From positions 7,440,001 to 7,504,000 of the forward strand of contig CM119384.1 in assembly GCA_051294905.1 (NCBI GenBank): 64,000 bases of DNA. Direction: 5' to 3'. The translations under genes were made by a program, and so were the position numbers. Below, piece by piece: positions 12,201-48,153 of the stretch; the stretch's first letter is position 1, and every line of letters begins with the position of its first letter. The notes beneath the pieces are model-generated. The model did no database searches. It was given only the letters and a program-made list of their open reading frames with translations, and was not told the origin of the DNA. Origin of the DNA: Botryllus schlosseri. Taxonomy: Eukaryota.

Positions 12201-15200
12201 GTGCTTGTCACTTATGATAATGTGCAGGTTAATTCAAAGAATTTTCATAGTTCAACAACAGTTACCGGCTAGCATATCATAGATACCAGTCTCGAAATCA
12301 AATTAGAATGAATGGATTGAAGTCGGCTGTTATAGGTTTTCATTCAGTTCGAGCTAAGTAGCAGGCTGCGTGCTGACTGTGGATATCGTAAGACAAAAGC
12401 AGTGATGGTCACGGAGCCTAGAAATGGCAAGCTAGAAATCTGGTTTGATATTCCTAACGCAATTACAGAATAGGTTACAAGGAATGCATTTAATAAGTGC
12501 AGCAATAAAGCCTTACAAAGCCTACATCAGTAAACTCTATGGCATCAGAGATGATACAAAGTAGCCATTGTTGGCACTAAGTTGAAGTAGAAAGACAAAG
12601 CCTAAACTTATACTCAATAACATGTAGACATTTTGAGGCAGGGTTGTAATGACTCGAGTCCAACTTGAGTGGCGAATTTTTGGGTTGACTCGACTTGAGT
12701 CAAGTCATATTTTCGAATGCGCAAAATGACTAGACCAGAGTCAATTTTTGTATCAACTCTTCTTGTACTCGAGTCATTCGAACCAAGTCATACGACTCGA
12801 GACTAGGACGGCCAAGGCAGACATTTCATTGTAACTTCGAAGAATAGTAAAGTTATAACACTATTGGTATTTCGTCGGTCCTGATACTCGGAAAATACTG
12901 CCAGAAACTGTTAAAACTGAGGAAAATTACTATATTATGAATGCGAGCCATTCTATGTTACTAGCAGAGTTGAAAAAAGTGGGTTGAACCGGATTGAACG
13001 TAATGACTTGGACTCGGACTCGAGTCAAAACACTGCGACTCGGACCTCGACTAGCTGACTTGGACTTGACTCAGCGGTGAATTGAAAATGACTCGACTTA
13101 ACTCGAGTCAAAACTATAAAAGTGAAATTGACTTGATTGATTACAACCCTGTTTTGAACTAAGTAAAAAGTAGGTATTCTTGGCATAATTTTGTCCAAAA
13201 AACTACATATTGCGAAGTAGAAGTGAATGTAGTCAAAAATCATAAGTACTTGAGTACAGTACGTAATGCAAGTAGGCGTTCTGTTTCGAAAAAGGAGAAA
13301 TACCTAATTATTATCACTTCAGATCACTATCGTGCATGTACCAATTAATAGCGAATACAAAATCACAATATACACGTCATTATTGACAAGGGCATGAAAA
13401 CAGTGTCCTCTGCACAGCCAGTTGAATTCAACGCAAACCCGTTATTTTCAGCAGCATGAAGTTATCTCTAGTCAAACTCACGAATCTCGTGATATTAGGA
13501 TGCGCGATCGCCGACGCCGTCACCACCAGGTTCCTAAGATTCGACGAGAGCCACCAATTTCTTGAATGCAACTGCCCGTTCAAAATCTTCGGCTGTCGCC
13601 AGGTCGAAAACCTCACCCTGGACTGCGACGACTGCGCCTCCCGCACTTTTGACAACATCACCCTGCCGTTCTTAGAACGCACCACGATATGCTGCCGAGA
13701 CAACGAGGATTCATCGGATAAGACACTTTTAAACGTCCAAACCCTCGTGAATTATTTGAACAATTCCGACATACAGCATTTCGCCACGAACGGCTGCGAT
13801 TTCGAACAATCCGCCAACACCACATCGAACACAAGAGATTTTATAGCGATCAACGACTTTTGGAAGATTCGAATCAAAGAGATCGGCAGCGGGACCGTAC
13901 TGGCGCAAGCTAACGTCACAGAAAGCAAGCTGAACGTCTGGGCGAAGGCGCATACGTCTGAGAAAAGAGCCAGAGACTTGACCAACTCGCTCTACGTTAA
14001 GACAGACACGTTTAGCGAGGTGTACAGCGACAACAGCACGGTAAAATCCTTCACTGTCATAGATTGGAGCGGAAACAATTCAGACCCGAGCCTGCGGACA
14101 TACTTGTACGCGACAAGCGATACGGGAGACACTGACCCATGAACACATCCAGATACCAAAATTCATGTGATGTCGCGACAAATTTGCAAAGTACCAAGAT
14201 TCGCAAACGACACATGTCTGCAAGAAGTGACAATAAAGGGATTATTATCCAGTGGCAGGATAGAAATATTTTGCCGGCCGGTTCTATCGCAATAGTCATA
14301 AAATTCTTCAGACGGTTCTGTAAAAAAACTCATTGCCAAGCGGTTTGATGATCACGGAAAATCTTGTGACACGGTTTTATGAAAACGGTGTGAACCGACT
14401 GAATCCGACCGAGACATATTGAGGAAACATGGATTCAATGTATCACTACTGGAATCTGGCAAGAAACCAGGCTTTCGCACAGAATTCGAACTGACAATAA
14501 CATCAGAATTTCTACCGACCATCCCCCGACTCAAGACCTCATTTTACCATCTTTAAAACAATTATCAATGAGACAAAGGCTTTTCACAGTGACTTCCGCC
14601 GGCAAATTCTGCTAAAGCAAAAAATTATCGAAAAGACAGATTTCGCATCGGGAGAGGCTTTTCATTCTTTCGTGTGCCGGCTTTGACCAAAATTCGGCAA
14701 CCTAGTTTGTGACCAAAATTCGGCAACCTAGTTTGTGTCAACAAAAGGAGTACATTGAATTTAAGCCATATGTCCATCTCAATTATTGGAATTTTCATGG
14801 CTGTGACGTCAAATTCGGTGATTTGTTGATGTACAATGGTCTTTTAATTCTCTACTAGTTGCTGACAATCACCCCTTGACGAGTGTCAGCCGGAAATATT
14901 CAGGTTTATTTTCATATGAATATACCATTCATTCAATTGTCCGTTGAAGTTCTGCAGCTCCGAGAGTCTGTTCAAAGTAACCAAACGCGAGACTGGCCGA
15001 CAATCAACTACATACCGCTTCTCAGCTTCCGTTGAATGACGGCCACTTCCTCCGTCTTCCGCTTCAGTATCTTCTGCTGGTTTCTGTTCTTCAGTTCCAG
15101 TTCCTAAAAAGCGTCGGCGCAAAAGGTCACTGTGAATTCCGAACGGAAGGCTCCGCGGACGCGTACTTTAATTTTAGTCTGATCCCGTGTTAGCACCGTT

Positions 15201-36200: not shown

Positions 36201-39200
36201 CGGGCATGACAAGAACGCCGCCGAAATCGAAGAGCATCAAAACACAATACCTCATCCGACTAACAGAAATTAAATCGCGAGACGCGGCTTACTACTGAAA
36301 CCCATCCTTTACCAAACTGCCAGAATACCTCTTCATCAGTAAATTTACGAACAAAGCTACCCGATCAACAATGTAACAATTGTTTGCCTAATTATATATT
36401 CAGCATGAATATTTCCATGACCAATCACACCAAGGACACACCGCTATTGTGTACTTACACGTTCTAACGGATTCAGGCGCAATAGTTCGAGTGACGTAAA
36501 GAAGACAAGTTTTCTCAAACATGCTTAAATGAGATTACTTTGCAGCACTTGGAATTACTCGGACATTTAAAAATATCGTGGGCTAACGTACCGAAAGTTT
36601 AATGACGCCCAAGCTTAGTTAACCTAGTTAATGAGTGACTGAAATTTCCTGATGGAATCGGGGGATTGCTACAAAAGTCACTACATGACAACGGTAGAAG
36701 AGTGTGGGCTGATTCATTTCCAGTGCTACCTGGAACGATAATACCGGTCGTTTCCTGCCCATTTTGCTTTGAATTTCTGCAATTCAGTATAGCCAGAGTG
36801 TTGTCACGCATATTGTGTGAATAGTGTGGTTTTGCTATTTGTGTTTTCATCATTTTTTCTAGATTTCCTTTTAAATTAAGCGTGTCAGTGCTGGTTTTCT
36901 TCGCGACAGTTCTTCAAAACATCTCAGTCGTTTGCTTTTTATCGAACAATTTTTAAAGATTTTCTCGTCCTTTTCAGCTTCAACGATATTTCTTCCGATG
37001 CTATTTGTTAAAAATAAATGACGTTCAATGATGTTTGCTGTGTAACACGTGAGAATGAGATGGGTTTCTGGTTATAACGATTGAGAGTTTGGCTCAACGT
37101 TGATTTAGACGAATTATTAAGCTCGTGGACAGTAAGCAAGGTACAAGCTCATGTCTTTTGTGAAATATAAAACAAGATTGCGGCTATTTGAATTTTGAAT
37201 CCACAATTGGATAGTCAGTAACATACATAATCACATAGTTATCATAGCAAGGAAAACATCTCCGCAACTTGAATATGTCATCGCCTACACTATTCATTAT
37301 GAAGGCATATAAAGTAAGAATGTATTTTAAGAGCATTTTAGAGGTACCGAACTTCAATATACGATAGAACGGTATATTCATTTTAATATGAATATACTAT
37401 ACAATTGTATAAGAATGAATTGCAAAGTTCAAACTTGTATCTTTTACACAATTAGAACGAAGACAATGCTAGTTGCACGACCAAAGTCAGTATTTTGATA
37501 TCTGTAAACCCAACCAATATGACTATAGAGTTTCGATACAATGTCGCTACATGTCAGGGTTGTAACCAAGTCACAAGGTTCCGAGTAACAAGTCAATCTC
37601 ACTTTTAAAGTTTTGACTATAGTCATTTTCAATTTACCACCGAGTCAGCTAGCAGAGGGTCGAGTCCGAGTCAAAGTGTTTTGACTCGAATTCACTGTTC
37701 AGTTTTCAGTGCATTCAGGTTCAACCCACTTTTTCAAAAATTTCCTACAGTCGTAACAGTTTCTGGCCCTATTTTCCAAGTATCAGGACTGGTAGGTACT
37801 AAATACCAATAATGTGGTAACCTTAATTCTTTGAAGTTACAATGACATTGACATGTATGTCTTGGCCGTCCTAGTCTCGAGTCATATGATTTGGTTCGAG
37901 TCATGTACAATGACTCAAGTACAAGAGAAGTCAATAAAAAAATTGACTCGAGTCGAGTCATTTTACTTATTTGAAAAAATGACTCGAGTCGAGTCGAGTC
38001 ACCAAAAAATCGTGACTCGAGTCATTACCCCCTGTTACATGTTTTCCATGTTGTGATAAAGCCAATTGAGGTTGCAAGTGGTAAGAAAGTGTCAAAACCA
38101 TAATTTCTGGTGATAAAATATTTGTTACAAATGGGCATGTAGTTTTGGTACTCGAAAAAAAAAAACAGACTCTTACTATTCGCTCCGAATGATTGTGCCC
38201 AGCCCGACCTGCTATGCAGTAGTACAGCAGAACAACAAACGTCAACTTTTCGCTATGCACACTTGCACAGTAGCTTGCAACCTGCTTGCCAAATAATGTT
38301 GACAGATTCCATGTCGACCTAGTCACTTACCCTTTTTGCGTCGTCTGAATGTAGCCTCACGTCTGCGCTGAACCAAGCGCCTCTCGAAGGATGGGGCACA
38401 GAACGGGCTCTGCTGTACTTGTTTGAACGAGACGAATCGTTCGAGAGAGTCGTGTTTTGCATCTGCAGGTGAAACTCCTCCCTCAGGTACATGATTTCTT
38501 CCTGCAGCTGCTCGATCACTACGTTCTGTTCGATGAGCTTTTCGCTCTGAAAAATATCAGCGGTACCGATTTATGGCTTCTCTGCATGGTTAACGAAATT
38601 CGCAGAACTTTTCGAGCATAACCAGAGGTGGTCAGTTACCAAGTACTTCTATTTTGCATGCTCAAGTGGTTACGTTTTTAGACTTCTTTCACATCTGTAA
38701 GAACATTTTCGAAGCAAAACTAATTACTTGTTACACATGGGACCTTAAGAGCTTCTTGGAGGTACCGAATTTCAATATACAATTGAATATTTGCGGCTGA
38801 CACTCGTCAGGGATAATCGTCAGCAATTAGTAGAGAATTGGAAAGAACATTGTATATCATCAACAACACTTTGGATTTTGAAAAGCGGAATTAGTATCAG
38901 GATCAGTTTGCAAAACTTTTACGAGTGAAAGTGCAATAAGAACCACGTGAAATAGCCCCTGTATCACAGTAATGAAACATATTTAAAAGATACTATCGAT
39001 TTGTAGTGCCATTTGTCACTATGCACTAGTCGCAAAGATACATCTACTACTACTCATATCGAAAGTATTCACCTCAGATCAACTGCCAAAGCACAAAGGT
39101 ACGCGATCTCTCGACTATTCTTACATCTCTTACTTATACTTCAAGTAGTTTTGACATGACTTGTAAATTGTTTTCTACTTGAAATTGAGTAAAAATTTAC

Positions 39201-42200: not shown

Positions 42201-45200
42201 ATTGAATAAAAATTGAAGAGCTTCTTGGAGGTACAAAACTTGAATAGGCTATATAATTGAATAGTAGCGTATATTCATATCAAGATAAACCCGACTATTT
42301 CTCACTGGGCAGCAAGCCTTTTCTCCGTAGGCCGCAGGCTGAACACCTCTGAGTTACAAGACAGTCGATAAGTAAAACTAAAGCAATCAAGACCAGGTAA
42401 ACATAAGAAAACTACTCTATCATAGAAAAAATATACATCAACCCACAGACCTGCTGCGGATCCCGATTAACGACCGGCTTGTTTGTGATGTTCTTTGCGC
42501 GATTCGCATATTTCAACGCGTTTATGGTCTCAGCGAAGCTCGTCGACGACGGACTGATGCAGGTTATCATCACAGTGTGCGCGTTACCTCCGAGGGAATC
42601 TTTCAAAACTCTAAAAACAGCAAAAGCGATTACTGGCGTTCTAGCGTTTTCATACCGATTAACTAAATAGTATATTCATATTGAAATGAACCCGAATATT
42701 TTCGGCTGACACTCGTCAGGGGTAATCGTCAGCAACTAGTAGAGAATTGGAAAGAACATTGTATATCAACAATCGTATCACAAAATATGACGTCACCAGC
42801 ATGAAAGAGAGAGCGTTCTTTCATGCTGGTGACGTCATATTTTGTGATACGATTGTTGATATACAATGTTCTTTCCAATTCTCTACTAGTTGCTGACGAT
42901 TACCCCTGACGAGTGTCAGCCGAAAATATTCGGGTTCATTTCAATATGAATATACTATTTAATTGTATATTGAAGTTCTGTACCTCCAAGAAGCTCTTCA
43001 AATACCGATTAACGTAAAAAGTTGGTAGTTTAACCAAAAAAATTGGTAGGTAGAAGTGAAAGCAGTCAACTAGGCAAAAACCTGCCTCAATACGTTAAAA
43101 AAAATGTGAAGTACCTCGTTACTGGCCACCGCTGTATATTCTACACAAGAACGGGTACCGTAATATGTCACCTGGTGATCTTGGAATCTCGATACGGAAC
43201 GTGCCCCATTTTCTTCTTCTTTGGATCGCTCAGGGCGCTGATGACATTCCCCAACGCCAGGAGCCCGGTGTTGATTTGCACGGATTCCTTGAACCTGTCC
43301 CAAACCGATACCCTGATATTAATCTTTGCCGAATCGGGTCATCGTTCGAACTGGGAAAAATCGAGAATCTATGTGATTCCATTACGAATTGTGTATTAGG
43401 CATCTAGTTGAATCGAGGAACATTTATTATGACTTGATAACAGTATCGATGACGTGGAAAATCTAAATATGTACCTTTATTTGCAGCCACTAAGACAATA
43501 ATGGAAGTTCTACATCACATTAAAATTATTCGGTATTTTTTCGACGATACCTATTTCATCACACTTTGTGACAATGCTGATCATGACTTCAGAGAAATGT
43601 CATTTCCACTAAAGCGCTTAGTTTTGTACTAGATGTTTTGGAGGCTGCGATACGACCAACTGAAGTTTTAAGCTTCCCGCGTTGGGAACAAACAATCAAA
43701 CAATAATTCTTGTTCAGAACAGAACTCTTAACGGAAAGGAGGTATAATTTCAGTATTAGAAAATAATCGTCTTTCACTACTCAACTCGATTCATAACAAT
43801 TAACACTCGATTGGAATTTGAGCACTCGAATCATTGTTCCCAGCCCTCGTCATCTCCAGTTGTGATTGCCGCGGACGCAAGCTCAGGCAAAAGCCACAAT
43901 ATAATTTCCAGGGGCAATGTAAGGACATGACGGGTGTATTATGAATCTAAATGACAGACTGAAGTCAACTTATATGATTTTGCTACGGTGGTGCATATTG
44001 ACAATATTTCAAATATAGATTGCGATAATATTTATGATTTACACCAAATACAGTGTAAATAATAAATTACAAATTACGGTTCTAGTATCAACTACCTTTC
44101 GCCCGTATTCCCAGTTCTGTTCGCTCTTTCCGACCCCGCCAGATCAACGAAATGAAATTTAGAAGACATGACGTTAACCAACTTCTCTTCGTTGAGATCG
44201 GTGCTTGCGATGCTGCTCAGAATATCCACCGAAGAAGAATTGTTGTTGTTATTGTCGTTTTGGGGTCTGGGCGTACACGGCCATGTCTGGAAGACACAAC
44301 AAATGACCCACATGAAGACACTTCCCTGATGCAATGAGGTGCCGACGCTCCTTGAGCAAGCACGATAAGAATGACAAAGTGTGAAATCAAACACGTCTTA
44401 TTTCCGATATACTACCATCTGTGAGACATGCTATTAAAGAAAACTCTGTTCTGTCTTGCAAATCATGGAAATTCCGCATGATCGGGGTTCGATCAAGGAT
44501 GCAACAATCATTAATACAACTAGATCGCTGGTTGAGTCCATATAAAATGAAATTATCAAAACCTCCTCCGGGCAAGCTACAAGTATACAAACCAGGGTCG
44601 TAACCAAGTCACAAGGTTCCGAGTCACAAGTCAATCTCACTTTTATACTTTTGACTCAAGTCGAGTCATTTTCATTTCACCACCTAGTCAAGTCCGAGTC
44701 AACTAGTAGAGGTTCAAGTCCGAGTCACAGTGTTTTGACTCGAGTCCAAGTTGTTGTTTTCACTGTTCAGTTTTCAGTTCAATGCTGCTCTGCTCGAGTG
44801 ATATAAAATAACTTTAGTATTCTTGGAAATAACAATGAAATGTCTGTCTTGGCCGTGTCAGTCTCGGGTCATGCAAAATGACTCAGGTACAAGTCGAGTC
44901 AATACACAATAGGACTCGAGTCGAGTCGAGTCACCACAAAATCACGACTGGAGTCAGACTCGAGCCATTACAACCCCGATACAAACCATGTTATATTTGT
45001 TACAATGCTGAGTTTGGTATCGAGGATGCATATTGCATAACTCACGCATGCTGTTGTATTCTTACTGCCAAGGGTCAAATGTACCACTTGATACAGCAAG
45101 GTCGAACGGTACCTGGATCAGATGAAGGCTGAAGATTGCGTGCGATCGGCTGGACAGTTCGTTCATCTGCGTTGCGCCGGTGTGCCGGACCGCACTGCCT

Positions 45201-46903
45201 TTTTGTAATAGACTCATCACTTCCTCGGCGGTGATGCATACTTCTTCTCGAGCCCCGATTATCACTAAAACAATTTTCCTATTGTAAGGTATAACTGGAA
45301 AAAATCCAACCACGGAAAAATATAGCAATAGCATTGTCACAGCATTTGTAGAGCGATTATTTACAAGAAAAGTACATGGTGTGGCACTTGCTAACAAAAC
45401 ACCATGCAACTTTCAATAAGCATTTGAAGAAGAATTTAACGACTACGAGTAATTTCACATACTGGTATTCCAATTTTGAGAGTTACCTTAGGGTACCATA
45501 CAATAAGACTCCAAATTATTGGCATGGCAAGTTTGGTTACGTATCAAAGCCAAAGTAAGTATTTCTCCATTTTAAAAGCTACTTTTTGATCTTACCAAAT
45601 ATCGTAACATTGTATTTCCAGGCTACGGCTGTAGTGAGAGAATTCGTATCTAACAATGAAAGCGCTACAGCGGCAATGTAGACCACAATAACAATCACAG
45701 ATACGGAGTGGACATTTGGAGAAAAATTGCTAATTATATTGATCAATGATCAATGCAACCAACAACGCATAAGTTTTGATTATTATCATCAGTGTCTTAC
45801 CAGTGTTACCATTCTGGTCTTCACGTATGTGCACGTCTTGACATTTTTGCAAGTCCACCTCCAGCAAATCTCTCACTTCCTCTTTATAAATCTCGACGTA
45901 AGACACCTGATAGAATGAAAAGCTTATCAAAGTGTTTAACTACCGAGATGATTAAAGACAAACCTTTAAGCTGTGATCGATATGCTTTCTGCCAAGCTGT
46001 TTCATTTCGCTGAAAATATTATCAACTGCTCTCGGTATGATGCCGCGTTCCTCTTTCGTAATATTAGCAGGATTGCTACCGCCGATAGTATATGTTTTTC
46101 CAGAGCCTGTCTGGCCGTAAGCAAATACGGTGGCATTATATCCTTGGAAGTATGTTGCGATGAGAGGCTTGATTGTGGTCTTGTATATTTCCTGAAATTG
46201 AAAATGCATAGTAGTTTCTATCCGAGAATGTGGGAAAGTATCTTTTGTTGTACTACAATAAATTTCAATTATTTGTACCATATTATGTGATGTAACTTAC
46301 TGGAATTCTTCATGGGTCCAGATTTTGTTAAAATACAGTTTTTTCATGTAAACATTTGGCAGCTTTTTCAAGTCAAAAAAGTTTTTTTTGGGCCAAACTA
46401 ATTCGTAAAGACAGACAGTTCCAACCAGAAATGAAGATAAGTAGTACAATTCTAACATTATGTGAGAAAACAACTCATTTACATACGTGAAGTAAAAATA
46501 TTGCCAAAATTAAGTTTTTCAAGGTCAAAAAATGTCAAAAGTTTGATTTTTTTGGTCAAAATCTTTCTTTTTCAAGTAAAAAAAAATTGCCCTAATTATT
46601 ACTATACAATATGGAGAGATATGTATACCTGTTGCTTGGCACTCCACCAGTGCAGATGGTCAAATGTGAAGGACCGATCTTTGCCAACTATGAGCTGATT
46701 CTTTGATTTCGGAACTTTTTTAACGCAAACCTAAATCACGGAAATGCATTTAGTTTGAATTTACCAAAAGAACGCATGTGAAACGGTTGTGCCAAATATA
46801 TAGTACGCCTAGCACACCATACCTGATGACTGTGAAGTCTTTCACCAGGTAAGAGAGGACGCACTCTTACAGCAACGCAAACATTCACAGGAGTTTCAGC
46901 CAT
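3259..46903 (-). CDS. KIF27: Kinesin-4 family motor, KIF27/KIF7 (Costal2-like), 28 coding exons, about 1461 aa
   Basis: Manually spliced GT-AG exons in 5'->3' order, all phase-compatible, total 4386 nt: 46903-46823, 46730-46629, 46191-45964, 45906-45801, 45264-45113, 44286-44096, 43294-43172, 42610-42451, 42072-41977, 41505-41346, 40656-40571, 40506-40387, 38546-38331, 21517-21309, 20568-20492, 19999-19835, 19131-18992, 17295-17233, 16714-16630, 15279-15167, 15103-15016, 10235-10030, 9417-9190, 8568-8353, 7456-7344, 7066-6981, 5541-5320, 3812-3259. Kinesin motifs: [14 protein letters not shown]-loop, [26 protein letters not shown]7/27-like tail motifs: [44 protein letters not shown]7 versus KIF27 cannot be resolved by eye. 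Confidence 0.92.
3965..5301. mobile_element. Related GACTCGAGTC-rich element with CAGTGTTG ends, containing a Tc1-like MITE
   Basis: CAGTGTTG...CAACACTG termini and GAGTC arrays at both ends. No clear TSD. Confidence 0.55.
4313..4701. mobile_element. Tc1/mariner-type fold-back MITE
   Basis: TIR CAGTAGGGTTGT...ACAACCCTACTG flanked by a TA duplication. Confidence 0.75.
5646..6212. mobile_element. Second copy of the Tc1-like fold-back MITE (about 250-bp imperfect arms, right end lost)
   Basis: Starts CAGTAGGGCTGTTCAAAAA. 5706-5945 pairs with 5965-6210. Homologous to 4313-4701. Confidence 0.7.
6293..6705. mobile_element. Older GACTCGAGTC-rich hAT MITE
   Basis: CAGGGTTGTAAT...CTACAACTCTG, with a degenerate TSD (5/8 match). 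Confidence 0.65.
7892..8172 (-). mobile_element. tRNA-derived SINE with Meta-like central domain, full length
   Basis: Reverse complement has an A-box-like TAGGGTAATTGT, B box GGTTCGATTCC and GGATCAGACCAAAGACC...CTTCCCCGTCTGGCGTTCAGCATTA. Confidence 0.75.
12639..13151. mobile_element. GACTCGAGTC-rich hAT MITE
   Basis: TIR CAGGGTTGTAAT...ATTACAACCCTG and TSD TTTTGAGG/TTTTGAAC. Confidence 0.8.
13456..14142 (+). CDS. Single-exon secreted Cys-rich glycoprotein, EPCIP/C21orf62-like, nested antisense in KIF27 intron 21
   Basis: 228-aa ORF with a hydrophobic N-terminal signal-like segment, a CxC-x6-C-x9-C-x2-C motif and 7 N-glycosylation sequons. [13 protein letters not shown] and [22 protein letters not shown] resemble the recalled human EPCIP segments EYLAICGLKRLRI and YISFLDMALFNRDSALKSYSI. 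A TTATTTTCAG acceptor lies 4 nt before the ATG. The family call is from memory. Confidence 0.7.
   Translation: MKLSLVKLTNLVILGCAIADAVTTRFLRFDESHQFLECNCPFKIFGCRQVENLTLDCDDCASRTFDNITLPFLERTTICCRDNEDSSDKTLLNVQTLVNYLNNSDIQHFATNGCDFEQSANTTSNTRDFIAINDFWKIRIKEIGSGTVLAQANVTESKLNVWAKAHTSEKRARDLTNSLYVKTDTFSEVYSDNSTVKSFTVIDWSGNNSDPSLRTYLYATSDTGDTDP
14791..14975 (+). mobile_element. Diverged full-length monomer (about 185 bp) of the hammerhead repeat family
   Basis: Aligns along 42817-43001. Core is degenerate (UUGACGA...GGAA). Confidence 0.7.
15653..16130. mobile_element. GACTCGAGTC-rich hAT MITE
   Basis: CAGGGTTGTAAT...ATTACAGCCCTG and TSD CTTCTGCT/CTTCTACT. Confidence 0.82.
17949..18820 (-). mobile_element. 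Internally deleted hAT element with a transposase C-terminal relic
   Basis: TAGGGCG...CGCCCTA termini and TTTTGAC subterminal arrays. The minus strand encodes [12 protein letters not shown], then after a frameshift [15 protein letters not shown], resembling the hAT dimerisation motif PxSSxxxERxFS. Confidence 0.6.
26866..36087 (+). CDS. Leucine-rich-repeat protein with long Ser/Lys/Thr-rich low-complexity N-terminus, about 752 aa, nested antisense in KIF27 intron 13
   Basis: Phase-compatible GT-AG exons 26866-26950 (tentative first exon), 30316-31608, 33167-33364, 33604-33749, 34488-34624, 34770-34937, 35856-36087, total 2259 nt. LRR units include [60 protein letters not shown] and [11 protein letters not shown]. 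Confidence 0.78.
35085..35215 (-). mobile_element. 3' fragment of the same SINE, in the last intron of the LRR gene
   Basis: Shares GAGTGCATGATGTGCATA and CTGTGCATATG with the other copies. Confidence 0.6.
37327..37410. repeat. Short fold-back fragment of the hammerhead repeat family 3' end
   Basis: AAGAGCATTTTAGAGGTACCGAACTTCAATATAC followed by an inverted ATATGAATATACTAT segment. Confidence 0.5.
37555..38034. mobile_element. GACTCGAGTC-rich hAT MITE, opposite orientation
   Basis: CAGGGTTGTAA...TTACCCCCTG and TSD CTACATGT/TTACATGT. Confidence 0.82.
38623..39249. mobile_element. AGTAG/TACTT-rich hAT-like MITE, hosting a hammerhead-family insert
   Basis: CAGAGGTGGTC...GACCAGCTCCT and an 8-bp direct repeat AGCATAAC on both sides. 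Related fragments at about 520-700, 8180-8280, 9780-9960, 16390-16540, 20150-20406 and 63860-63990. Confidence 0.6.
38747..38866 (-). mobile_element. Hammerhead-family copy with degenerate core, nested in a hAT MITE
   Basis: Reverse complement reads CCCTGACGAGTGTCAGCCGCAAATATTC...GAAGCTCTT, with helix I 3' strand deleted. Confidence 0.7.
42213..42280 (-). repeat. 3' fragment of the hammerhead repeat family
   Basis: TTGAAGAGCTTCTTGGAGGTAC matches the reverse complement of the family 3' end. Confidence 0.6.
42690..42723 (-). ncRNA. Minimal hammerhead ribozyme motif, mirror copy, sense in the KIF27 pre-mRNA
   Basis: Exact reverse complement of 42902-42935 within the palindrome. Confidence 0.7.
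42902..42935 (+). ncRNA. Minimal type I hammerhead ribozyme motif
   Basis: ACCC-CUGACGA-G(UGUCAGC)C-GAA-AAUAUU-C-GGGU. Helix I is ACCC/GGGU, the core is CUGANGA...GAAA, helix III is the palindrome AAUAUU, and the predicted cleavage is after C42931. Confidence 0.72.
44593..44978. mobile_element. GACTCGAGTC-rich hAT MITE
   Basis: CAGGGTCGTAA...TTACAACCCCG and perfect TSD ATACAAAC. Confidence 0.85.
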
Positions 46904-47739: not shown

Positions 47740-48153
47740 TCATTTGGCCCGAAGCCTTTTAATAAATATTATTTCATCATGATTGTTTATTCCGTATTCC
47801 TTCAAAACTTTTTTATCATCTTGTAATTTCTGACGGTTGAAAGACAGCCAGTAGCTCTTCCAGACATACTTCCAATTGACTTTCCTCGAATCATTGCTCC
47901 GTTGCATTTGCAAGGTGACATACCGCTGAATAGCATTTTTCAAATCGAGAACGGTGGCGTTCAAGTTTACGATAACGGAATAGCTATCGCCGTCGGCCCG
48001 ACATATTGTTAGTGACATTGCCTGACCATATTCCAATCCAGTCAGAGCATTAACTTCTTCAATGGTTGTATCTTGGTTTACATCAACAAGCAAAGGATCT
48101 CCCAGCATTTCGTCAAGTTTCTGGTTGCAATAATTTTCAATGTCAAAATCCAT
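47740..48153 (-). CDS. SNRNP25: U11/U12 snRNP 25-kDa protein (minor spliceosome), uninterrupted CDS
   Basis: 137-aa ORF with DPLLVDV...IEEVNALTGLEYGQAM, ATVLDLKNAIQRY, VNWKYVWKSYWLSF and YGINNHDEIIFIKRLR, matching the recalled SNRNP25 ubiquitin-like domain. Confidence 0.92.
   Translation of the reverse strand: MDFDIENYCNQKLDEMLGDPLLVDVNQDTTIEEVNALTGLEYGQAMSLTICRADGDSYSVIVNLNATVLDLKNAIQRYVTLQMQRSNDSRKVNWKYVWKSYWLSFNRQKLQDDKKVLKEYGINNHDEIIFIKRLRAK

What the first reader, a model, noticed from the sequence alone, without database searches (positions are those of the whole stretch)
42690..42935. Pair of minimal hammerhead ribozymes of the Penelope-associated, dimer-acting type inside a KIF27 intron
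Seen: 42902-42935 reads ACCC-CUGACGA-GUGUCAGCC-GAAAAUAUU-C-GGGU. This gives a complete hammerhead core, a 4-bp helix I, a 1-bp helix II, a self-complementary helix III (AAUAUU) and a UUC cleavage triplet. An exact mirror copy lies on the minus strand at 42690-42723. Loop II (GUCAGC) is complementary to GCUGAC just upstream (42892-42897; 7 bp in the 14861 copy), which suggests a pseudoknot. Known: minimal type I hammerheads with a palindromic helix III are characteristic of Penelope-like retroelements and cleave as dimers. Inference: the core's own CUGAC can also pair with GUCAG in an inactive hairpin, so the upstream GCUGAC could act as a built-in activator by sequestering loop II. This may be an uncatalogued ribozyme and retroelement family.
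Basis: partly seen in the sequence, partly recalled or inferred. Interest (0 to 1): 0.85.

Follow-up and report, generated by a model that had tools for sequence, protein, structure and literature searches.

The report
Penelope retrotransposon fragment with hammerhead motifs
The two hammerhead ribozyme motifs are real, but they are the tail ends of one dead, back-to-back insertion of a very young, roughly 2,500-copy Penelope-like retrotransposon in a kinesin intron; this is a known kind of element, and the less ordinary part is that the ribozyme's second helix is made by pairing with a box just upstream.

Summary
An intact type-I hammerhead core lies at 42902-42935 (+), with an exact mirror at 42690-42723 (-).

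The two motifs are not an independent pair. They are the arms of one insertion (42664-43004) flanked by a 12-bp target duplication. It consists of a 188-nt 3' end of a Penelope-like element (PLE) joined to an inverted, tail-less partial copy, which is the classic PLE insertion shape.

The full element is a 2,692-nt tandem unit. It encodes a reverse transcriptase plus a C-terminal GIY-YIG endonuclease. The 44-nt box-plus-ribozyme occurs 2,539 times exactly in this 495-Mb genome.

Across 9 related PLEs, and in further lineages in this genome, the upstream box and "loop II" are fully complementary, with compensatory changes at 5 of 6 pairs. Helix I covaries and helix III is always palindromic.

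The "built-in activator" idea is not conserved. The two copies here cannot form a dimer, because they lie on opposite strands and would fold into a roughly 150-bp hairpin. RNA reads show no ends at the cleavage site.

PLE hammerheads that cleave as dimers are already published, so this is a new member of a known kind. The scan had already noted the same element elsewhere in this genome (s1-231978).

The parts
42652..42663 (.). Left copy of the 12-bp target-site duplication (ATACCGATTAAC)
   Evidence: The exact string occurs only at 42652-63 and 43002-13. Its first 3 nt overlap the element's own 3' end, so the duplication is 9-12 bp.
42664..42816 (-). Inverted, 5'-truncated PLE fragment that lacks the terminal 'tail' (about unit positions 2497-2648 of 2692)
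   Evidence: It forms an inverted repeat with the direct copy. blastn to the 2692-nt unit gives 99.3% identity. The same kind of inverted partner, ending 26-46 nt short of the 3' end, is seen in about half of 30 other loci.
42690..42723 (-). Hammerhead motif of the inverted copy; this is the sense orientation for the host kinesin pre-mRNA
   Evidence: Exact reverse complement of 42902-42935.
42728..42733 (-). Upstream pseudoknot box (GCUGAC) of the inverted copy
   Evidence: The 44-nt box plus ribozyme matches on the minus strand at 42690-42733.
42817..43004 (+). Direct 5'-truncated PLE 3' end, 188 nt including the tail (unit positions 2505-2692)
   Evidence: 100% identical to 40 or more other genomic copies, which share the fixed 3' end ...CUUCAAAUA followed by unrelated flanks.
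42892..42897 (+). Pseudoknot 5' box (GCUGAC), 4 nt upstream of helix I
   Evidence: It pairs with 42915-42920. Across 9 lineages 52 of 52 cells are paired, and 5 of 6 pairs show changes on both sides.
42902..42935 (+). Type-I minimal hammerhead. Helix I is 42902-05 / 42932-35, the core is 42906-12, G10.1 is 42913 and the pseudoknot 3' strand is 42915-20. C11.1 is 42921, GAA is 42922-24, palindromic helix III is 42925-30 and C17 is 42931. The predicted cut falls between 42931 and 42932.
   Evidence: Sequence. Helix I shows compensatory changes at 4 of 4 pairs, and G10.1-C11.1 is invariant in 6 of 6 aligned relatives. Helix III is a perfect palindrome in all 9 lineages.
42946..42948 (+). ATG that starts the 848-aa RT-endonuclease ORF in full-length tandem copies, 14 nt after the predicted cut; it has no ORF behind it at this locus
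   Evidence: It is in frame with the ORF in L036. In all nine relatives the called ORF start lies about 3-70 nt after the cut.
42961..43004 (+). 'Tail': the terminal 44 nt present in the direct copy but missing from the inverted copy
   Evidence: Palindrome extent. This matches the optional 30-40 bp PLE tail described in PMC8557442 and PMC11167929.
43002..43013 (.). Right copy of the target-site duplication
14785..14976 (+). Older, decayed 3'-end fragment of the same family (81% identity), with a mutated hammerhead core
38747..38863 (-). Older fragment (93-95% identity) with GAAA mutated to CAAA and a 24-nt internal deletion (unit positions 2620-2643) that removes the 3' strand of helix I
42213..42300 (-). 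Old fragment of the last roughly 80 nt (80% identity), truncated inside the hammerhead
37323..37411 (.). Small pair of opposed tail-region fragments of the same family

Best explanation
The region is one dead-on-arrival insertion of a young, highly amplified Penelope-like retrotransposon (PLE) in an intron of a KIF7/27-like kinesin gene. The PLE has the Penelope/Poseidon-type architecture. The insertion holds only the last 188 nt of the 2,692-nt element, joined head-to-head to an inverted partial copy that lacks the terminal 'tail', and is flanked by a 9-12-bp target duplication. This is the signature product of PLE integration. Each arm carries the element's own hammerhead ribozyme.

In the active element the ribozyme sits about 100 nt before the 3' end of the unit, that is, in the pseudo-LTR of tandem copies, and 14 nt upstream of the ORF's start codon.

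Inferred mechanism. In transcripts of tandem copies, two sense ribozymes pair through their palindromic helix III to form a double hammerhead. Helix II is only the G10.1-C11.1 pair. It is extended or replaced by a 5-6-bp pseudoknot between the nucleotides after G10.1 and a box 3-4 nt upstream of helix I, which holds helices I and II side by side. Cleavage after C17 would release unit-length RNA whose 5' end lies just upstream of the AUG.

At this locus neither copy is expected to act. They are on opposite strands, and host transcripts would fold the whole insertion into a roughly 150-bp perfect hairpin.
For: Shown by tool results:
- Copy number and insertion shape: the exact motif has 2,539 copies. 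Copies share a fixed 3' end and variable 5' truncation, and often have inverted tail-less partners.
- Element structure: the tandem period is 2,692 nt, with hammerheads 2,692 nt apart. The open frame is 859-860 aa and hits RVT_1. [quoted passage not shown] Two homologues carry Pfam GIY-YIG PF01541.
- Target duplication.
- Ribozyme selection: the pseudoknot is paired in 52 of 52 cells, with 17 double-changed cells, against 25-35% pairing in slid controls. Helix I shows 4 of 4 compensatory pairs. Three relatives carry the C3-G8 to U3-A8 core covariation, a variant also reported in PMC4209133. Helix III is palindromic in 9 of 9 lineages. Other lineages in this genome have compensated boxes.
- A 58-nt stretch (42877-42934) covering the box and ribozyme is the longest invariant run between two subfamilies that share only 87-88% protein identity.

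From the literature:
- PLE pseudo-LTRs carry minimal hammerheads that are thought to act as dimers, and opposite-strand pairs 100-700 bp apart are noted (PMC4209133).
- Inverted 5'-truncated copies and a 30-40-bp tail are PLE hallmarks (PMC8557442, PMC11167929).
Against: No cleavage was seen. In three raw-read RNA runs, reads cross the predicted cut at depth of about 200-650, and no pile-up of read starts or ends was reported. Most of those reads run on into unrelated flanks, so they come from single truncated copies embedded in other transcripts. Full-length element RNA was nearly absent, so the test has little power for the tandem or dimer case.

Other weak points:
- Helix III of this family (AAUAUU) is very weak as a duplex, at -0.2 kcal/mol.
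- The minimum-energy fold of the monomer is an inactive pair of hairpins.
- Covariation cannot show that the pseudoknot and the catalytic fold exist at the same time.
- Rfam hammerhead models give no hit even at E<=10.
Confidence: 0.85

Rival explanations
1. The conserved box-to-loop pairing is not part of the catalytic fold. It would instead be an alternative or independent hairpin, for example a recognition element for the element's RT/endonuclease or an 'off' state, and the hammerhead would be a weakly active or inactive passenger.
For: In most relatives the nested minimum-energy fold is simply this hairpin enclosing the core. No in vivo cleavage signal was seen. Published PLE hammerheads cleave poorly in vitro (PMC4209133), and catalytic mutants did not affect insertion in vitro in Anolis (PMC11167929).
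Against: All catalytic nucleotides, G10.1-C11.1, helix I covariation and the C3-G8/U3-A8 co-change are kept across lineages with only 40-64% protein identity. Without the pseudoknot there would be no helix II at all. A hammerhead with a 1-bp stem II plus a 6-bp pseudoknot is a proven active design (PMC3088659).
Confidence: 0.12
2. The repeat is a non-autonomous 'retrozyme' or SINE-like element: a short hammerhead-bearing repeat mobilised in trans and propagated through small circular RNAs.
For: Most copies are short and non-coding. Animal retrozymes are related to PLE pseudo-LTRs (bioRxiv 10.64898/2026.07.22.740005).
Against: The short copies are collinear 3' ends of the 2,692-nt coding unit, truncated at many different 5' points. 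They are not tandem arrays of 150-400-nt units. No short tandem period was seen around the copies examined.
Confidence: 0.04
3. The pair is a locus-specific functional device: the ribozymes cut the kinesin pre-mRNA, or the palindrome is a DNA-transposon (MITE) or microRNA-type hairpin gene.
For: It is a long perfect hairpin. There are sub-threshold Rfam hits to long plant miRNA precursor models. The location is intronic, on the host's transcribed strand.
Against: The same sequence sits at about 2,500 other places. The Rfam hits are far below gathering scores and only reflect a long stem. The arms are unequal (148 against 188 nt) and continuous with a retroelement rather than terminal inverted repeats. 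The insertion is essentially undiverged (99-100% identity), so there is no sign of host-level conservation.
Confidence: 0.03

Closest known systems
Minimal (min-)hammerheads of Penelope-like elements (Cervera & De la Pena 2014, PMC4209133; Lunse, Weinberg & Breaker 2017, RNA Biol 14:1499, not readable here)
   Same: Both are type-I topology with a short helix I and a helix III reduced to a palindrome, which implies a double-hammerhead dimer. Both sit in the pseudo-LTR of an RT/GIY-YIG element, occur in thousands of dispersed copies, sometimes form opposite-strand pairs, and include the U3-A8 core variant in relatives.
   Different: Published examples that I could read have a long hairpin helix II (6-8 bp), and reviews describe them as lacking tertiary contacts (PMC6155905, PMC7761336). 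Here helix II is a single G-C pair plus a covarying 5-6-bp pseudoknot to a box upstream of helix I. I could not check whether Lunse et al. already show this.
Pseudoknot-stabilised hammerheads (Perreault et al. [quoted passage not shown]
   Same: Watson-Crick pairing links the stem II loop region with sequence next to stem I. Stem II can be as short as 1-2 bp, and the pseudoknot is needed for fast cleavage in the tested cases.
   Different: Those ribozymes are monomeric with a real stem III, and the one-base-pair case is type II. Here the pseudoknot is combined with a dimer-type palindromic helix III in a retrotransposon.
Penelope/Poseidon-clade EN+ PLEs (Arkhipova 2006; Craig et al. 2021, PMC8557442; Frangieh et al. 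2024, PMC11167929)
   Same: [quoted passage not shown] Both show partial tandems, inverted 5'-truncated copies, an optional tail, variable target duplications and a hammerhead in the pseudo-LTR.
   Different: The unit is compact at 2.69 kb. The start codon lies 14 nt downstream of the predicted cut, whereas in the Anolis element the cut is 26 bp inside the ORF. Clade placement rests on motifs only; no tree was built.
HDV-like ribozymes at the 5' end of R2/L1Tc elements and hammerheads before ORFs in RNA viruses (Ruminski et al. 2011; PMC13725137)
   Same: A self-cleaving ribozyme sits immediately upstream of the coding start, so cleavage would define a very short uncapped leader.
   Different: A role in translation is shown for those systems. 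Here it is inferred only from position.

Membership tests
Hammerhead ribozyme (type I) | Conserved core: C3-U4-G5-A6-N7-G8-A9, G12-A13-A14, the A15.1-U16.1 pair, and H17 (not G) at the cut | tested here: met
   All are present at 42906-42931. They are kept in 9 lineages, and C3/G8 change together to U3/A8 in three of them.
Hammerhead ribozyme (type I) | Helix I formed by the 5' and 3' ends, supported by covariation | tested here: met
   All 4 pairs show changes on both sides, and 100% of cells are paired.
Hammerhead ribozyme (type I) | Helix II hairpin starting with G10.1-C11.1 | tested here: inconclusive
   G10.1-C11.1 is present (U-A in one relative), but there is no hairpin stem beyond it. 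A covarying pseudoknot takes its place. A 1-bp stem II plus pseudoknot has a precedent (PMC3088659).
Hammerhead ribozyme (type I) | Site-specific self-cleavage giving 5'-OH and 2',3'-cyclic phosphate ends | tested here: inconclusive
   No pile-up of read starts or ends at the predicted site in 3 raw-read RNA runs. The reads came almost entirely from single embedded copies, and the libraries are not end-specific.
Rfam hammerhead families | A score at or above the gathering threshold of a curated covariance model | tested here: not met
   No hammerhead hit at the gathering threshold on the window, and none at E<=10 on 42600-43020. The models expect a real stem III and stem II.
PLE-type dimeric min-hammerhead | Helix III reduced to a short palindrome that can pair only between two copies | tested here: met
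   Perfect 6-8-nt palindromes with 7 different sequences occur across the 9 lineages.
PLE-type dimeric min-hammerhead | Location in the pseudo-LTR of an element that encodes RT plus GIY-YIG | tested here: met
   The ribozyme recurs every 2,692 nt in tandem arrays, flanking the ORF.
Penelope-like element (EN+) | Reverse transcriptase with the PLE-type DKG motif | tested here: met
   RVT_1 hit at E=8e-9. The 'PDKGSG' motif is in the translation. 842 homologues were found at E<=1e-10; the ones listed carry RVT_1 and two animal-retroelement domains.
Penelope-like element (EN+) | C-terminal GIY-YIG endonuclease with cysteines between GIY and YIG (CCHH motif) | tested here: met
   The motif VVY-x3-C-x-C-x-C-x-YVG, followed by R...H, lies at the C-terminus. 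Pfam GIY-YIG did not score on this protein but is recorded on two homologues.
Penelope-like element (EN+) | Insertion anatomy: 5' truncation, partial tandems, an adjacent inverted 5'-truncated copy, an optional 30-40-bp tail, and a target duplication | tested here: met
   The criteria come from PMC8557442 and PMC11167929.
Penelope/Poseidon clade specifically | Phylogenetic placement of the RT, and absence of the CX2-5CxxC linker | tested here: inconclusive
   The linker motif is absent by eye. No tree was built.
Animal non-LTR retrozyme | Short (about 150-400 nt) non-coding units in tandem, each with a hammerhead | tested here: not met
   The copies are truncated ends of a coding 2.69-kb unit. 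No short tandem period was found.

The most novel reading that the evidence does not exclude
This PLE lineage is widespread in marine metagenomes and highly active in this genome. It may use a hammerhead design not yet described for retrotransposons. In that design the hairpin helix II is replaced by a pseudoknot with a box upstream of helix I, helix III is dimer-only, and the cut falls a few nucleotides before the AUG. The ribozyme would then both define the 5' end of the element's mRNA and prime its cap-independent translation, as HDV-like ribozymes do for R2 and L1Tc.
Probability: 0.25. Interest if true: 0.6.

Novelty: new member of a known kind. Interest (0 to 1): 0.3.

Why it matters
At this locus it matters little. 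It is one of about 2,500 near-identical retrotransposon ends, although it places a roughly 150-bp perfect inverted repeat inside a kinesin intron.

For the ribozyme field the useful points are these:
- Reviews describe PLE hammerheads as minimal motifs without tertiary contacts and of unknown role. In this lineage they carry a strongly covarying pseudoknot and sit immediately upstream of the start codon. This argues that the catalytic fold is under selection and gives clear mutants to test.
- The family is very young: copies are 99-100% identical and many open frames are intact. This organism could therefore be a good system in which to look for PLE ribozyme cleavage in vivo, which has not been seen elsewhere (PMC11167929).

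Tried and rejected
- Rfam scans at the gathering threshold and at E<=10 found no hammerhead. The only hits were sub-threshold long-hairpin miRNA models, explained by the palindrome.
- Covariation could not be tested inside the family itself. The 87-88% subfamily has an identical ribozyme, so I turned to homologues from other organisms and to a covariance-model search of the genome.
- One homologue contig (L064) did not reach the ribozyme.
- RNA read laying gave no cleavage signal. This is reported as uninformative rather than negative, because full-length transcripts were almost absent.
- The MITE / DNA-transposon reading is rejected, because the 5' ends are variable and continuous with an RT ORF.
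- Lunse et al. 2017 (PMC5785218) is not held. I therefore could not check whether this exact pseudoknot architecture is already drawn there. My recollection is that its abstract mentions pseudoknots between nucleotides preceding stem I and the stem II loop; that is from memory only.
- No RT tree was built, and no element consensus was made.
Full report
**1. What is in the sequence**

All catalytic hammerhead positions are intact:
- the CUGACGA core;
- a G10.1-C11.1 pair;
- GAA;
- an A15.1...U16.1 palindrome (AAUAUU);
- C17;
- a 4-bp helix I.

The upstream GCUGAC (42892-97) is complementary to 42915-20. This is far from chance. A relaxed pattern finds 5 window matches where 0.07 are expected. 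The exact 44-nt box plus ribozyme occurs 1311 + 1228 times in the 495-Mb genome, while the reversed control occurs 0 times.

**2. The two motifs belong to one insertion**

They sit in the arms of a 148-nt, 99% inverted repeat with 8 nt between the arms. Comparison with 30 other genomic copies shows three things:
- The plus-strand arm is the last 188 nt of a repeat with a fixed 3' end, at window 43004.
- Other copies extend leftwards for very different distances, that is, they are variably 5'-truncated.
- About half carry an inverted partial copy abutting the truncation point, and that partner always stops 26-46 nt short of the 3' end.

In the window the inverted copy lacks the last 44 nt. The whole structure is flanked by the 12-nt string ATACCGATTAAC at 42652-63 and 43002-13.

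**3. The parent element**

Upstream of longer copies lies a reverse-transcriptase ORF. A genome search with it found many copies with uninterrupted frames of up to 860 codons, including head-to-tail arrays with a 2,692-nt period. In those arrays the hammerhead recurs every 2,692 nt.

The ORF carries three relevant features:
- an RVT_1 domain;
- the PLE 'DKG' motif;
- a C-terminal GIY...YIG core with cysteines between the two halves, followed by R and H.

There is no CX2-5CxxC linker. By the criteria in Craig et al. 2021 (PMC8557442) this is the domain pattern of Penelope/Poseidon-type PLEs. The database holds 842 homologues at E<=1e-10. Those I traced came mostly from marine metagenome assemblies, and two of the listed ones carry Pfam GIY-YIG.

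The same papers describe partial tandems (pseudo-LTRs), an inverted 5'-truncated copy at the 5' side, and a 30-40-bp 'tail' at one end only as PLE hallmarks. Frangieh et al. 2024 trace the tail to two internal RT start sites (PMC11167929; PMC8557442). The window's palindrome is therefore a textbook PLE insertion, very recent (99-100% identity) and non-coding. Four to five older, decayed fragments of the same family lie elsewhere in the window.

**4. Is the ribozyme under selection, and is the pseudoknot real?**

Within the family there is no variation to use. A subfamily with only 87-88% protein identity has an identical ribozyme, and the longest invariant run between the subfamilies is 58 nt (42877-42934), covering box and ribozyme.

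I therefore fetched the DNA around eight homologues with 40-64% protein identity from other organisms. Every one has a hammerhead at the same place, just upstream of the ORF start. In an alignment of all nine sequences:
- The upstream box and the strand after G10.1 are Watson-Crick complementary in 52 of 52 cells.
- Five of six pairs show changes on both sides (17 cells).
- Sliding the partner by 1-3 columns drops pairing to 25-35%.

Further points from these relatives:
- On six cleanly aligned sequences, helix I shows compensatory changes at all four pairs, and G10.1-C11.1 never varies.
- Helix III is a perfect 6-8-nt palindrome in all nine, with seven different sequences.
- Three relatives have U3...A8 in place of C3...G8, the core co-variation reported for other PLEs (PMC4209133).
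- A covariance model built from these sequences found further lineages in this genome with compensated boxes, for example ACUGGC/GCCAGU and UCUGGC/GCCAGA.

The pseudoknot is thus as well supported as comparative analysis allows.

**5. How it most likely works (inference)**

Beyond the single G10.1-C11.1 pair there is no hairpin helix II. The 5-6-bp pseudoknot stacked on that pair most plausibly is helix II, or at least the contact that holds helices I and II parallel. There are precedents. [quoted passage not shown] 2011, PMC3088659).

The palindromic helix III can pair only between two ribozymes, as in the double hammerheads proposed for PLEs (PMC4209133; PMC6765202 citing Lunse et al. 2017).

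In full-length tandem copies the start codon lies 14 nt after the predicted cut and is in frame with the 848-aa ORF. In the relatives the called start lies about 3-70 nt after it. Cleavage would therefore yield unit-length RNA with a very short leader. This recalls ribozyme-assisted translation in R2 and L1Tc elements and in some RNA viruses (PMC13725137). That last step is analogy only.

**6. What is not supported**

In five of the nine lineages that alternative pairing is weak or absent, yet the pseudoknot persists.
- The two copies in the window cannot cooperate. They are on opposite strands, so any transcript has one sense ribozyme next to its perfect complement. The host-sense RNA of 42650-42975 folds into a roughly 150-bp hairpin at -265 kcal/mol.
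- Three raw-read RNA runs laid on a tandem junction show reads crossing the cut site at depth of about 200-650, on both strands. No place was reported where molecules begin or end. Between 63% and 96% of the reads run on into unrelated sequence. The ORF part has depth of about 0-28 and the 5' part of the next unit almost none. The reads therefore come from embedded fragments, and the test says little about tandem transcripts. It agrees with the negative result reported in Anolis (PMC11167929).

**7. Context and novelty**

The host is a minus-strand kinesin gene with motor-domain exons at 44092-46281. Its best solved relatives are KIF7, so 'KIF7/KIF27-like' is fair.

Hammerheads in PLE pseudo-LTRs, their dimer architecture, their thousands of dispersed copies and even opposite-strand pairs are published (PMC4209133). 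This is a new member of a known kind.

The one less ordinary feature is the pseudoknot that stands in for helix II. Reviews describe PLE hammerheads as lacking tertiary contacts (PMC6155905, PMC7761336). I could not read Lunse et al. 2017 to exclude prior description.

The scan had already met this element elsewhere in this genome. An earlier follow-up (s1-231978) reached the same reading of the pseudoknot helix, which my independent covariation test confirms.

Noticed in passing
window 42664-42964: In the kinesin pre-mRNA the insertion would form a perfect double-stranded RNA hairpin of about 150 bp (-265 kcal/mol). That makes it a candidate substrate for Dicer or ADAR and a possible source of small RNAs against the PLE family. 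Many similar close inverted pairs exist genome-wide (for example 62-225 nt apart on contig C1).
   Followed up: partly
L060, L064, L061 and other homologue contigs: Several metagenome and Logan contigs that encode homologous PLEs are 2,685-2,808 nt long, almost exactly one unit. L060 begins and ends with the same sequence, as expected when a tandem or circular template is assembled.
   Followed up: no
G000:C18:588410-642033: Five covariance-model hits lie exactly 13,395 nt apart on contig C18, so a hammerhead-bearing PLE fragment is embedded in a large tandem repeat.
   Followed up: no
window 47740-48153 (-): An ORF with a strong Ubiquitin_4 ubiquitin-like domain (E=6e-32) lies just upstream of the kinesin motor exons on the same strand. 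It could be a separate gene or an N-terminal exon.
   Followed up: no
L036:1498-4077 and L005 flank: The first 19-20 codons of the ORF, including the ATG, are encoded by the 3' end of the preceding unit. A solitary unit therefore lacks its own start codon, and only tandem copies or copies bearing a pseudo-LTR can be translated from this ATG.
   Followed up: partly
table 1 and table 2: RNA coverage of the PLE 3' end is equal on both strands and mostly chimeric with unrelated flanks, so this family contributes many exonised or intronic fragments to host transcripts.
   Followed up: no
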